DNA of 60,556 nt, filler included, from Bipalium vagum (Eukaryota), in the NCBI GenBank assembly GCA_037834085.1. It is 3 parts of 3 records of this genome, joined end to end, with 100 filler letters (N's around TTAATTAATTAA, not from the genome) between each part and the next. Parts side by side here need not be neighbours in the genome. Positions count along the whole stretch, not along the records: positions 17,412 to 43,570 come from JBBMKC010161279.1; 2 more parts are not named here. One strand, written 5' to 3'. Position 1 is the first letter of the stretch; every line of letters starts with the position of its first letter. Shown here one piece after another: positions 20,880-43,570 of the stretch. The notes under the pieces were generated by a model. That model searched no databases, was not told the DNA's origin, and saw only the letters and a list, made by a program, of their open reading frames with translations. Made by a program: the position numbers and the translations under genes.

Positions 20880-21515
20880 GGTAAAAGTATAAAGGAACAT
20901 TTCACGAAAAAATATTGTAATTTCTGTCTTTTAAATAATACTTCATTGGATATTTTGAAATGAAATCTTTTTTCAAAATATTTGCAATCAAGAACAAATT
21001 TTAAAATATGTGAAGAAAATTAACCAATTAAACAATCCCTTCGTATTTCGACAACACTTCTAAACCGACTAGTTTCGCAATTTCGTACTTTTTGACGCTC
21101 ATCTTGCTCACTTGTGATTTTACTGCTTCTGCAATGTGATCTTTTATTTCTCTGGAGCAAAACTTTTTGCAGTCGTTGACAAAATTTAGCAACTGTATTT
21201 CAAGACATCTTTAAATAAACCACAATTTCCTGGTAGCTCCACTGAGCATCAAATTTCAATGAATATACTCTTCCAAGCCTAAAATCTGATTAATCCGCAA
21301 ATCTTTTCATGTTTTTGCCAGCATCCATTTTAAATAAATATTTTGTTAAAACAAATTAATAACATATCGATATTTTTATAATCATTTTCATTAGTTCCCT
21401 TTCCTTTTAGTTTAATTGAAACGAATTAATAAAAAAATAAGTTCAACAAATGCATCAGTTATATCATAAAAGACAACGGATTTTAAAGGTGTGTAAATTT
21501 CATTGTCCAGGACTG
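20880..21515 (-). mobile_element. Tc1-like 5' fragment
   Basis: Terminus CAGTCCTGGACAATGAAATTTACACACC at 21515 followed by a decayed N-terminal transposase frame. Confidence 0.55.
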
Positions 21516-21784
21516 TTTGTGAAAAAAGTTAAAAACCAGTTCATCATTCCACGTAATAGTAATAAGATAAAACAAAATAAAATTATTTATTACTAACAAA
21601 TTTGGAAAGTCGTGGTCGTTACTGTTATCTGTTTAATACTACCTGATGTGTATACATAATAAAAACTAATCACAATGATTAAAAGAAATTTCAAGTTGGT
21701 AAAACGGGTTAACTGCAATGTAAGATTGTTCATGTAAAATTAAAATTGAAAGGTCTTCATAACCGAGAATGATTGATTAATTTT

Positions 21785-23057
21785 TCAAAGGTTCTGATGG
21801 AAAGTACAGTCCATTCGTGGTGGCAGTTCATTAAAGTTGACTTCAGACAGACAGCTCTATAAAACAGAAAACTGTCTTATATTATGAAACAATAATATTG
21901 TCCCTACTTCATATTTTGTTTCAGTGTGCTTGTTGGAATTACATCTCTAAAAGGAAAAAGGTAAAATAAAATGATTTTTGATCTGAGCCTTACTTTGATC
22001 TTATGATTCGTATGTGAGAGATGAGGAAACTGAATGTCGTGTTAACAGTAATCAAACAAAATAATAATAATATATCTACATGAAAATGAAAAGAATTTCG
22101 TTTGACCGGATGTTCCGATTTATTACTCTGCTCAACCTAAAATGGCTGAATCACATAAAAATAAAAGAAATAAAAACATTGTTTTGATCCTTATCGCGTT
22201 CTGTGTAATTCTGAGGTTCCTTAAAAAGTGATGAAAAAAATGAGTTTTTTAATTCACGAAAATACTTCATCATCATATTCATCCTGACAATCTGATACAA
22301 AGGCTGAATCAATCTGCAAAGTCACCAAAATAACATTAATTATAAATATCAACCAGTATACCATATGCTCATATTTCATAGAATGATGATGTGATGCTGT
22401 ACCATGTCCGTGACCGTGCTGGAATATTTAATTTATATATATATATATAAAGTTTAATTGTTCTGGTTCTTGTAAACAAGAAAACAAAATTATCACAAGC
22501 ACTTGTTTCAGAAATTCGTCAATGTATTGATTCATAACTGTGACCTGTCTTTTTATTCATGTAATAATGATTCTCTGTGGAGAAAAAATTTTCAATCAGA
22601 ATCGATGTTTATATTCATTTTAGTGAGGGAACCACGAAAAAATTCGAGATTTATTTTTATTCTCACTGTTTTTATATGTTTCATTATATTAGGTTGGAAC
22701 ATAAATTCCCGAGATTTTTTAATATTCATTTATAAAACAAGAAACACAAATTATAAACACCATTAATAATAACAGATTAGTGATCAGTCATTGGTAACGA
22801 CCTCGTCCACAGTTTGTCAAGGCCACGACTCCAGAAATCTTTGGAAATCAAGGAATTTATTCAGCCACTTTTTAAGATCATCCTCATTATCGAATATATG
22901 GCCCATCATTTAGATGGACATCGAGCGGAAAAGATGAAAATTCGTTGGAATATGATCTCGTATGGATAATATTATAATAAAAAAGGATTTTCATTACATA
23001 ATATCTGATATAATTTTTCTTGATTTATAAAAAAAGCTTAATACCTCTATTAATAAA

Positions 23058-23113
<56 letters not shown>

Positions 23114-23797
23114 TTTTCGTCATTTTCGTACAAAGAATCATTAAAAAAATGTAAAATTTAGCAGTTTTTAACAAAAATGACAAAAAATTTCCAATTAAAA
23201 ATTTCGTATTTATTAAAAAAAAATATCTCGATTTAGTCTTTTATAAAAAATTTGAATAATAAAATAAGTTTTATATATATAATTGATTAATAATAAAATT
23301 GATCAATGATAATATATTTAAAGATTTTATATTGATTTTTTAAATTAATTAAAATAAAAATATCGTTATATGAAATATTGATCTATTCAAGTATCGATTT
23401 TTACAATAAAAAATACCAAAGAAAATTTATTGAATTTTTTTTCATTAAATCAAATAAAAAACTGATAAATGTTATAAGCACGAAAATACTTTAGTGAAAA
23501 ATTTACAATTTTATTATTATTAATTATTTTTATTATTTATTTAAAAATGACATCGTAAACAAACAACATAAACAAAGTATAAATTGTCAAAACCTTGATC
23601 ATTTTTTCAGCTGATTTTTGCTGTTTTTTCATCTCTTTCTCAAAACGTTCATTTTCCGAGCTATAGCCAAGAAAAGCCAGTCTTGATAAATAAATAAATA
23701 AAATAATCAACATATACAATATAATAACTAACTTTTGCAAGTTATTAAAGCGAGGAAATTGTTTATGAGGCATAAAGAAATAATGTTCTCTACTGAA
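21785..23797 (-). CDS. 3' part of a micro-exon-rich host gene of unknown function with His-rich C-terminus
   Basis: Ten GT-AG bounded exons in frame: 23733-23797, 23594-23681, 22503-22544, 22362-22418, 22266-22313, 22178-22219, 22080-22136, 21994-22029, 21908-21946, 21785-21856 (stop). Spliced: FSREHYFFMPHKQFPRFNNLQKLAFLGYSSENERFEKEMKKQQKSAEKMIK-VTVMNQYIDEFLKQ-HGHGHGTASHHHSMKYEHM-IDSAFVSDCQDEYDDE-EPQNYTERDKDQNN-VEQSNKSEHPVKRNSFHFH-FPHLSHTNHKIK-RCNSNKHTETKYE-SCLSEVNFNELPPRMDCTFHQNL*. Confidence 0.8.
22689..22975 (-). mobile_element. Mariner 3' end in an intron
   Basis: TIR TA|TTAGGTTGGAACATAAATT; NFHLFRSM...FDNEDDLKKWLNKF. Confidence 0.8.
23058..23110. repeat. (AAT)n microsatellite
   Basis: About 17 perfect AAT units. 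Confidence 0.95.
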
Positions 23798-24518
23798 CTA
23801 ATCAAAATTAATAAAGCGTTGAGTATATAGTTCCGTAATGAATTTAAACAAAAAGGTATGACATTGTTATTAAGCATTTGTTAACAGTGCTTCACAAACA
23901 AATGTTATCAATTTCTGTAATAAGTCTAAATAATATTTGCAAAAAGTTACGAAATTTAACAGTTAACGTAAGAAAAATATAAAATTTTATTAAAAAAGTA
24001 TCGATAATATTGGATAAGACCAAAGGAAAATTAATATTGATGAAAAGCTGAAATTTATTTCATCTGGATAATAAAGTAAGTAAATTTCGTATATGAGAGT
24101 GTGATCGATTGGAAAATAAAATATTTTATCGGTGTTAGGTTTTTTTGTTTGTTTAGGCTCAATATTTCCTGTTTTAATATTTGTCTGTGATTATATATTA
24201 TTATAATTATGAATATGTGTCTCATTTAGATTTACATTAAACAATTAATATAATTAAACTGTGCAGATCACATACAAAAATCAATTTCATAAGAATAATG
24301 TGTAACTGTTAGTCTGAAATCAAATAGAATATTAATTTTATTTTCATTTGTAATTTCTACTATGATTCGTAGCTCTCGATTATAAAAGTGTATCTAATGA
24401 ATGTCCAGAACATCCATGGTTGTTATCAAGGATGAAATTATCATAACATATATCCTCCTGAAAAGGAACCAATCATTTTACTTCTCAACTCAAATACTAC
24501 CAAATCTCTAAAAGAGAA

Positions 24519-42540: not shown

Positions 42541-43252
42541 TAATTTGGTGGACTAAATCAAGATGTAAGTTACAGAAATTCAAAAAATGAGAAAATTTTC
42601 ATTGTTTTGGATTTTTGAGCTTGAGTTTTGTTCTTCTTTATCAATTTACACATATTAATATAATCCATTTGAAATGGTACAAAAAAATTATTAATTACCT
42701 AAATATATTAAAAAGTTTTAGCATTGGGACAGTATGATTTGACAAATCAGAGTTGGAAGTGGCAAGGTTGAAAAGTGATTTAAGACATAATTAAAAGAAA
42801 AATAATGAACATTGGTATTTATATATTTTTGAAATATATATGTATATATTTTTTTAAAATAAGAAGTTTATCTTTATTTATTTCGGCCCCAATATGTTGC
42901 ACAGTACAATGAGTTTAGAGTGTAAACTGTATAGGTACACCAGAAAAGCCCATCATCGTTCTATCTAATTTTTTAAGTATTCAATTTTTGAAACTAAAAA
43001 TTTGCCACTTTCCAAATGTTTTTTAATTATTCATCATTATTGTATTTGGTCCTCGATGAATGAAGCTGCAAATAACTTAAGAATAATGAATTCTTCTGTC
43101 TCCTTCTATCACAAGTCAACTTCAACGATTTTTTGGAATCCATAGAAAAAAAGGTATCAGCACCCACAGCACCCCTGAAAAATTCGAAATCAAAGTCCAC
43201 AAAGGAGTCGGAACAGCGGCAATCCGATCAATACGTAGATGATGGAAAATAA
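42541..43252 (+). CDS. Small plus-strand gene (3' exons), unknown function
   Basis: Phase-1 symmetric exons 42541-42564, 42722-42766, 42935-42976 and terminal 43116-43252: IWWTKSRSLGQYDLTNQSWKWQGTPEKPIIVLSNFLINFNDFLESIEKKVSAPTAPLKNSKSKSTKESEQRQSDQYVDDGK*; start codon not located. Confidence 0.45.
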
Positions 43253-43570
43253 TTCTCTAAAGCTCACAATTGATATTTAACTAATTATGATTTTTGTCAA
43301 ATTTGCACGAAAAGCCTTGTTGTGCTTACTTTTCTTTTATTTTTTTGACTGTTTGTTATGTAATTTTTTATTTTATTTTATTTGTTATAAAAATAACAAT
43401 ATTTTATTTTATAAATCTGTTTTTCATTAAGTTTAATAAATAATTTAATAATATTGGATTGTAAAGTTCAAAATCCAACTAATAAAATTTATTAAAAAAA
43501 AGAATTTTTACATAGATAAAATAAGAAACTTAACAAAAGTAATTTCCATTGTTATCTATGATCTTTTGCC

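What the first reader, a model, noticed from the sequence alone, without database searches (positions are those of the whole stretch)
21785..22544. Eight consecutive phase-0 micro-exons: a MEG-like cassette hidden from ORF callers
Seen: minus-strand exons of 42, 57, 48, 42, 57, 36, 39 and 72 nt, each a multiple of 3 and stop-free until the last, separated by GT-AG introns of 84, 48, 46, 41, 50, 47 and 51 nt. Such regularity is hard to obtain by chance. Known: Schistosoma micro-exon genes use strings of symmetric tiny exons to generate variants by exon skipping. Inference: any internal exon can be skipped in frame, giving a potentially combinatorial, modular C-terminal tail in an unannotated gene. 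No homology to MEGs is claimed.
Basis: partly seen in the sequence, partly recalled or inferred. Interest (0 to 1): 0.82.

Follow-up and report, generated by a model that had tools for sequence, protein, structure and literature searches.

The report
Small gene split into eight in-frame mini-exons
A real-looking, single-copy gene for a 127-residue, very water-loving, histidine-rich protein is cut by seven tiny introns that all fall between codons. This layout is unusual for its genome, but nothing shows that it is a schistosome-type micro-exon gene or that its exons are shuffled.

Summary

The bare pattern is not rare. It appears in about 7% of shuffled copies of the 26-kb piece. Other evidence makes it a probable gene:
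- Six of the seven introns have this genome's own intron size (40-53 nt, mode 47).
- Every exon is GC-richer than every intron.

The coding region seems to be complete, not a C-terminal tail. An in-frame TGA lies eight codons upstream of an ATG at 22535. The product has 127 residues, GRAVY -1.41, 15 His and 21 Asp+Glu, with no signal peptide or membrane segment in the model.

It is single copy. I found no paralogue, relative or Pfam match.

It is not a MEG. It lacks a signal peptide, its introns are tiny and its exons are larger. With such short introns, intron retention is more likely than exon skipping. Only intron 2 could be retained in frame.

No RNA data could be examined, so splicing is inferred, not shown.

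The parts
22503..22544 (-). Coding probably starts at ATG 22535-22533, giving 33 coding nt. The true 5' end is unknown: either a transcription start further upstream or the good acceptor whose first exon base is 22574.
22557..22559 (-). In-frame TGA eight codons upstream of the ATG. It closes the frame on the 5' side.
22419..22502 (-). Intron 1, 84 nt, GT-AG, phase 0, GC 0.21. It contains a (TA)8 run. An alternative phase-0 donor lies 6 nt downstream, making the last exon base 22497.
22362..22418 (-). Exon 2, 57 nt, 19 codons, 7 of them His (HGHGHG and HHH).
22314..22361 (-). Intron 2, 48 nt, GT-AG, phase 0. It is the only intron that is a multiple of 3 and stop-free in frame. If retained it would insert 16 hydrophobic residues.
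22266..22313 (-). Exon 3, 48 nt, 16 codons, net charge -7.
22220..22265 (-). Intron 3, 46 nt, GT-AG, phase 0.
22178..22219 (-). Exon 4, 42 nt, 14 codons.
22137..22177 (-). Intron 4, 41 nt, GT-AG, phase 0.
22080..22136 (-). Exon 5, 57 nt, 19 codons.
22030..22079 (-). Intron 5, 50 nt, GT-AG, phase 0. Reading through it is stop-free but shifts the frame.
21994..22029 (-). Exon 6, 36 nt, 12 codons.
21947..21993 (-). Intron 6, 47 nt, GT-AG, phase 0. It has the best donor (GTAAGG).
21908..21946 (-). Exon 7, 39 nt, 13 codons.
21857..21907 (-). Intron 7, 51 nt, GT-AG, phase 0.
21785..21856 (-). Exon 8, coding part 72 nt: 23 codons plus TGA at 21787-21785.
21586..21591 (-). AATAAA 194 nt past the stop; an ATTAAA lies at 148 nt. 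These are candidate poly(A) signals, but such motifs are common by chance in AT-rich DNA.

Best explanation
This is a single-copy, lineage-restricted protein-coding gene of an AT-rich eukaryote. Its whole coding region, 127 codons from ATG 22535 to TGA 21785 on the minus strand, is split by seven short introns that all lie between codons (phase 0).

Six of the introns have the size this genome's splicing machinery normally handles (about 47 nt). They are probably removed constitutively, by recognition of the intron rather than the exon.

The product is very hydrophilic, acidic and histidine-rich, with four Cys and no signal peptide or membrane segment. It is most likely an intrinsically disordered intracellular protein, possibly metal-binding through its His clusters.

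Shown here: the anatomy, its statistical departure from chance, and the coding periodicity. Inferred: that the introns are actually spliced, the start codon, and the nature of the protein.
For:
- About 40 introns inferred from tubulin and CCT genes of the same assembly are 40-53 nt (mode 47) with GC near 0.2. The candidate introns are 48, 46, 41, 50, 47 and 51 nt, plus one of 84 nt, with GC 0.21-0.28.
- With introns limited to 40-55 nt, only 6 of 3000 shuffles give a chain this long.
- Of 727 null chains of at least 5 exons, 2 reach the observed GC contrast, 16 the codon score, 36 the splice score and 6 the share of modal-length introns. None reaches three of the four measures. The observed chain reaches all four.
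- Twenty spurious chains in 150 kb of real sequence from this genome never resemble it.
- Codon-position bias gives chi2 45.3 (nominal p 4e-8), and 0 of 20,000 control sets reach it. A is the commonest base at codon position 2 in every one of the eight exons. Random per-exon phases reach the observed value in 0.03% of trials, so the exons are in register.
- Frame 0 has the best codon score: +0.06 per codon, against -0.12 and -0.02 for the other frames.
- The product has few Ile, Leu and Phe, unlike random ORFs from 27%-GC DNA.
- An in-frame stop lies upstream of the ATG.
Against: - There is no transcript evidence at all. Only one public run holds the stretch and it is not on record as RNA.
- There is no paralogue in the 440-Mb assembly and no relative in 1.84 billion representative proteins for the one contiguous two-exon stretch. 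No conservation supports the gene.
- Splice-site scores are only intermediate: mean -2.2 bits, against +1.7 for trusted introns and -6.2 for background. Three of the seven fall below every trusted intron.
- The codon score (+0.06) is below that of housekeeping genes (+0.24).
- A scoring parse prefers to read through introns 2 and 5, so not every junction is certain.
- Conserved genes in this assembly have long exons and few introns, which makes this architecture unlikely in advance.
Confidence: 0.72

Rival explanations
1. It is a functional analogue of schistosome micro-exon genes. The symmetric mini-exons are skipped in different combinations, or intron 2 is retained, so one locus yields a family of variant peptides.
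For: - All seven introns are phase 0, so any internal exon can drop out without breaking the frame.
- Several splice sites are weak, as is often the case for alternative exons.
- Intron 2 is 48 nt and stop-free in frame. Retaining it would add a 16-residue hydrophobic stretch.
- In 18 CCT introns of this genome about 61% are phase 0, so seven of seven has a probability near 3%.
Against: - There are no RNA data.
- The model has no signal peptide, whereas MEG products are secreted.
- Introns are 41-84 nt rather than 0.1-5 kb. By general knowledge, such short introns are recognised as units, which favours retention over exon skipping.
- One in-frame stop-free intron among seven is expected by chance in roughly 40% of cases (my estimate).
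- It is a single gene, not a family.
Confidence: 0.1
2. It is a chance arrangement. AT-rich, transposon-littered intergenic DNA happens to offer GT and AG pairs around stop-free patches, and no gene exists.
For: - The bare pattern arises in about 7% of shuffled 26-kb pieces.
- The scan has looked at very many windows.
- Stop-free patches tend to be GC-richer in real, patchy DNA, which Markov shuffles do not model.
- There is neither transcript nor conservation evidence.
- The locus sits between broken transposon copies.
Against: - The coherent three-base periodicity in all eight exons is not produced by selecting stop-free frames (0 of 20,000 control sets; per-exon register).
- Intron lengths match the genome's mode.
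- No null chain, shuffled or real, combines the observed features.
Confidence: 0.1
3. It is a real spliced locus with a different structure from the one drawn. Intron 2 and/or intron 5 may be exonic, giving a product with hydrophobic segments and a shifted C-terminus. Alternatively, undetected coding exons may lie further upstream across a long intron.
For: - The scoring parse prefers a 153-nt exon (22266-22418) and a 143-nt exon (21994-22136).
- A second frame is open across exons 3-8.
- The assembly does have some introns longer than 0.5 kb.
Against: - Introns 2 and 5 are 48 and 50 nt, have GC 0.27 and 0.24, and are bounded by GT-AG like the genome's true introns.
- The upstream ORF at 23537-23773 has no coding signal, and an in-frame TGA precedes the ATG.
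Confidence: 0.08

Closest known systems
Schistosoma micro-exon genes (MEGs)
   Same: Both have a run of short exons whose lengths are multiples of three, so exon loss keeps the frame. Both give a small product without recognisable domains and are invisible to ORF callers.
   Different: As described in bioRxiv 10.1101/2023.06.21.545858, MEGs have:
- 10-20 exons of 6-81 nt, mostly 15 nt;
- introns of 0.1-5 kb;
- an N-terminal signal peptide followed by a hydrophobic motif;
- multi-gene families restricted to Schistosomatidae.

Here there are 8 exons of 36-72 nt, introns of 41-84 nt, no signal peptide and a single copy, in a 27%-GC genome with 47-nt introns. No sequence comparison of the joined product was made.
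Modular genes with symmetric phase-0 exons in general, such as the 54-nt exon units of fibrillar collagens (from general knowledge, not tested here)
   Same: In both, all exons are multiples of three and the introns lie between codons.
   Different: Those genes arose by duplication of an exon unit and encode a repeat. Here the exon-intron units and the introns show no similarity to each other, and the exon peptides are not repeats.
Histidine-rich, highly hydrophilic disordered proteins (a general class; hydrophilins are one defined subset)
   Same: GRAVY is -1.41, His makes up 12% of residues, the protein is acidic, and only 20% of residues are hydrophobic.
   Different: By my recollection, the hydrophilin definition needs more than 6% Gly. 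Here Gly is 2.4%. No homology or structure was tested.

Membership tests
Schistosoma micro-exon gene (MEG) family | Most of the coding region is made of very short exons (6-81 nt, majority about 15 nt) | tested here: not met
   Exons are 36-72 nt with a mean of 49. None is under 36 nt (definition).
Schistosoma micro-exon gene (MEG) family | Exon lengths are multiples of three (symmetric exons) | tested here: met
   All eight lengths are multiples of 3 and all seven introns are phase 0. The register is supported by periodicity.
Schistosoma micro-exon gene (MEG) family | Long introns (0.1-5 kb) separate the micro-exons | tested here: not met
   Introns are 41-84 nt.
Schistosoma micro-exon gene (MEG) family | N-terminal signal peptide, giving a secreted product | tested here: not met
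   The first coding exon is hydrophilic (GRAVY -0.88) and no exon is hydrophobic. The upstream hydrophobic ORF has no coding signal. This was judged by composition only; no signal-peptide predictor was available.
Schistosoma micro-exon gene (MEG) family | Sequence relationship to known MEG proteins, and membership of a multi-copy family | tested here: inconclusive
   The DNA and two exon peptides are single copy in the assembly. The contiguous stretch of exon 2, intron 2 and exon 3 found only repetitive chance hits. The joined product was not searched, by rule.
Schistosoma micro-exon gene (MEG) family | Variant proteins produced by exon skipping | not testable with these tools
Micro-exons in the strict sense (30 nt or less, or 51 nt or less, depending on author; thresholds from memory) | Exon length at or below the threshold | tested here: not met
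   No exon is 30 nt or shorter. Five of eight are 51 nt or shorter. 'Mini-exons' is the fairer word.

The most novel reading that the evidence does not exclude
An organism unrelated to schistosomes has independently evolved a gene whose whole coding region is a string of symmetric mini-exons. It uses them, by exon skipping or by in-frame retention of the hydrophobic 48-nt intron 2, to make several versions of a histidine-rich disordered protein from one locus, including a soluble form and a membrane-anchored form.
Probability: 0.08. Interest if true: 0.6.

Novelty: new variant of a known kind. Interest (0 to 1): 0.33.

Why it matters
If confirmed by cDNA, this would be a clean example of a gene that standard ORF-based and many homology-based annotators miss entirely. 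It is an orphan whose largest coding exon is 72 nt. The genome around it otherwise keeps long exons and few introns: this gene has about 18 introns per kb of coding sequence, against about 1-3 per kb in the conserved genes sampled.

It would also show that the symmetric-exon layout of schistosome MEGs can occur with minimal introns and without secretion. That separates the architecture from the immune-evasion role usually attached to it.

As it stands, it is one locus in an unidentified, poorly assembled genome, with no expression data. Its weight is modest.

Tried and rejected
- **RNA evidence.** The look-up of sequencing runs listed one run of unknown kind and no RNA run.
- **Paralogues.** DNA of the locus and the peptides of exons 8 and 2, each by reference, found only themselves in the own assembly.
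- **Relatives.**
  - Two degenerate DNA patterns drawn from exons 8 and 3 found nothing in metagenome contigs.
  - The 51-residue contiguous stretch 22266-22418 found no Pfam family.
  - In the 1.84-billion-protein library it found only two repetitive proteins, matched through a repeated His-rich and hydrophobic motif. I reject these as chance hits.
  - I did not run the search for homologous proteins. Its length window would have hidden a 127-residue protein from a 51-residue query.
Homology and structure of the full product are therefore untested.
- **Origin by duplication or introner-like elements.** There is no tandem repeat, no repeat family and no similarity among the seven introns.
- **Non-coding RNA.** No Rfam match in 20900-24000.
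- **Upstream signal-peptide exon.** The ORF at 23537-23773 has a hydrophobic start but no periodicity, a negative codon score and a poor donor.
- **Simple combined gene-finder score.** This did not rank the locus first in the piece; transposon ORFs win. Position weight matrices built from about 32 introns are noisy and only weakly informative.
- **Organism.** An Atlas look-up of a CDC48 ORF gave no useful taxon.

Full report
**What is there**

- Eight stretches of 42, 57, 48, 42, 57, 36, 39 and 72 nt, all multiples of three and open in one frame. The last ends at TGA 21787-21785.
- Seven spacers of 84, 48, 46, 41, 50, 47 and 51 nt, each starting with GT and ending with AG.
- Exon GC is 0.31-0.43 and intron GC is 0.21-0.28, with no overlap between the two sets.

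**Is the pattern more than chance?**

Taken alone, it is not. I searched for chains of AG-bounded, GT-followed, stop-free exons of 36-75 nt (multiples of three) separated by 40-90 nt. Twenty of 300 composition-preserving shuffles of the 26-kb piece gave a chain of at least seven.

**The genome's own introns**

The piece is contig C161279 of a 440-Mb, 272,664-contig assembly.
- From exon-by-exon matches of tubulin and CCT chaperonin genes in that assembly, I inferred about 40 introns with an expectation-maximisation fit over frame-consistent GT-AG pairs.
- They are overwhelmingly 40-53 nt long (mode 47), with GC near 0.2, GTA or GTT at the 5' end and a T-rich stretch before AG.
- Six of the seven candidate introns fall in that narrow class.
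- With the chain search restricted to 40-55 nt introns, only 6 of 3000 shuffles reach the observed six internal exons.
- The rest of the piece reaches no more than two or three.

**Comparison with null chains**

I collected 727 chains of at least five exons from 1500 shuffles.

| Measure | Null chains reaching the observed value |
|---|---|
| Exon minus intron GC contrast (0.115 observed; null 0.002 +/- 0.039) | 2 |
| Codon-usage score | 16 |
| Intron-motif score | 36 |
| Share of modal-length introns | 6 |
| Any two of the four | 3 |
| Any three of the four | 0 |

The four measures are only weakly correlated. Twenty spurious chains found in about 150 kb of real sequence from the same genome, mostly inside long ORFs, all have a GC contrast of 0.05 or less and poor splice scores.

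**Coding periodicity, the strongest evidence**

- With each exon counted from its first base, base composition differs sharply by codon position. A makes up 54% of position 2, G+C 52% of position 1, and T 43% of position 3.
- The 3x4 table gives chi2 45.3 (nominal p 4e-8). Sets of eight stop-free control exons average 9.8, and none of 20,000 sets reached the observed value.
- The bias is present in every exon separately and survives removal of the two exons with short triplet repeats (chi2 24.9).
- Giving each exon a random phase reaches the observed value in 0.03% of trials. The exons are therefore coding in register, which is what all-phase-0 junctions predict.
- Frame 0 also has the best codon score.
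- Selecting stop-free frames cannot create an excess of A at position 2, so this is not an artefact of how the exons were picked.

**Weaker points**

- Splice-motif scores are intermediate: mean -2.2 bits, against +1.7 for trusted introns (leave-one-out) and -6.2 for background. Three introns score below every trusted one. The matrices rest on about 32 introns and are noisy.
- The codon score is +0.06 per codon. That lies above null exons (-0.11 +/- 0.085, P 0.02) but below housekeeping genes (+0.24). This is not surprising for a protein of very different composition.
- A simple combined scoring parse prefers to read through introns 2 and 5.
  - Intron 2 is 48 nt and stop-free in frame, and would encode 16 hydrophobic residues.
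  - Reading through intron 5 shifts the frame into a second frame that happens to be open across exons 3-8.
  - That second open frame is not remarkable given the composition: about 3 stops would be expected, so P is about 0.05 by my estimate.
- I regard both as introns because of their length, composition and boundaries, but individual junctions are not certain.

**Extent of the gene**

A good acceptor lies 30 nt further upstream, with its first exon base at 22574, on the far side of that in-frame stop.
- The coding region is therefore most likely complete within these eight exons, at 127 codons, and is not the tail of a larger gene.
- The only upstream ORF with a hydrophobic start (23537-23773) has no periodicity, a negative codon score and a poor donor.
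- AATAAA and ATTAAA lie 194 and 148 nt past the stop, but both motifs are common in AT-rich DNA.

**The product**

I counted residues exon by exon and never joined them.
- 127 residues, GRAVY -1.41.
- 15 His, including HGHGHG and HHH in exon 2.
- 21 Asp+Glu against 13 Lys+Arg, and four Cys.
- Only 20% hydrophobic residues, and no hydrophobic exon. The model therefore has no signal peptide or membrane span.
- Random ORFs from 27%-GC DNA are rich in Ile, Leu, Phe, Asn and Lys. This one is not, which again points to selection.
- My inference is an intrinsically disordered intracellular protein, possibly metal-binding. This is inference only.

**Relatives**

- The DNA and the peptides of exons 8 and 2 are single copy in the assembly.
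- Degenerate patterns from exons 8 and 3 found nothing in metagenome contigs.
- The only contiguous stop-free stretch that spans two exons (22266-22418, 51 residues) has no Pfam family.
- Against 1.84 billion representative proteins it found only two repetitive proteins, matched through a reiterated motif. I take these as chance hits.
The full product was never searched or folded, so 'orphan' is provisional.

**Origin**

The exon-intron units are not duplicates of each other, and the introns share nothing beyond AT-richness. An origin by unit duplication or from introner-like elements is not supported.

**Comparison with MEGs**

| Feature | MEGs (bioRxiv 10.1101/2023.06.21.545858) | This gene |
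|---|---|---|
| Exons | 10-20 exons of 6-81 nt, mostly 15 nt | 8 exons of 36-72 nt |
| Introns | 0.1-5 kb | 41-84 nt |
| Signal peptide | present | none in the model |
| Copy number | multi-gene families | single copy |
| Range | restricted to Schistosomatidae | unidentified 27%-GC genome |

This gene shares only the exon symmetry, so it is not a MEG.

Whether it works like one, through in-frame exon skipping, cannot be tested here. By general knowledge, genes with introns this short are spliced by recognising the intron, and their usual variant is intron retention. Only intron 2 could be retained without truncating the protein.

Seven of seven phase-0 introns is unusual but not extreme. About 61% of my 18 CCT introns are phase 0, which gives roughly 3% (a small sample that is not independent).

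What does stand out is intron density. Seven introns sit in 381 coding nt, in a genome whose conserved genes often have ORFs of 400-788 codons without any intron.

**Limits**

- No transcript data were available. Only one public run, of unknown kind, holds the stretch.
- The organism is not identified.
- A wider real-sequence background could not be fetched.

**Verdict**

| Reading | Probability |
|---|---|
| Real small coding gene with seven phase-0 introns, as drawn | 0.72 |
| The same with combinatorial splicing | 0.10 |
| Chance arrangement, no gene | 0.10 |
| Real spliced locus with a different structure | 0.08 |

The MEG analogy holds for exon symmetry only. The combinatorial reading is unsupported.

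Noticed in passing
window 22790-22980 (-): Directly upstream of the gene lies a broken copy of the C-terminal part of a mariner-type transposase, with in-frame stops. I recognised it by eye from its motifs.
   Followed up: partly
window 27975-28139 (-), 28990-29145 (-), 33428-33646 (-), 34498-34656 (-), 35449-35820 (+): The piece holds several more Tc1/mariner transposase fragments. Only 35449-35817 was tested against Pfam (DDE_3, E 7.5e-6, below the curated cut-off). The candidate gene is a unique island in transposon debris.
   Followed up: partly
window 25254-25412 (+) and 26425-27830 (+): Two CCHC zinc-knuckle motifs, one interrupted by a stop, are followed by purine-rich ORFs with the highest coding scores in the piece and strong GC and AT skew. 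This is probably a decayed retroelement gag region.
   Followed up: partly
G000 loci L036 vs L037; L039 vs L040; L008 vs L009; L010 vs L012; L020 vs L021: Conserved genes come in pairs. Some pairs are near-identical in protein. Others belong to two different GC classes: one CDC48 copy has GC3 0.56 and the other 0.23. The assembly may mix organisms, or the genome may be duplicated.
   Followed up: no
G000, many contigs: There are more than 150 tubulin-domain matches, many of them divergent alpha-tubulin copies. They share a phase-1 intron of about 47 nt at the same site, after EPTV(I/V).
   Followed up: no
window 22314-22361 (-): Intron 2 is in frame and stop-free, and would encode 16 hydrophobic residues if retained. 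About 40% of seven-intron genes would have one such intron by chance (my estimate).
   Followed up: partly
window 42949-43538 (+): A chain of five symmetric stop-free 'exons' sits at the edge of the piece. Its GC contrast is 0.006 and its codon and splice scores are poor, so it is at chance level.
   Followed up: yes
window 23050-23110 and about 31200-31350: There is a long (ATT)n microsatellite upstream of the gene. A run of 151 N lies inside the piece and was left untouched.
   Followed up: no
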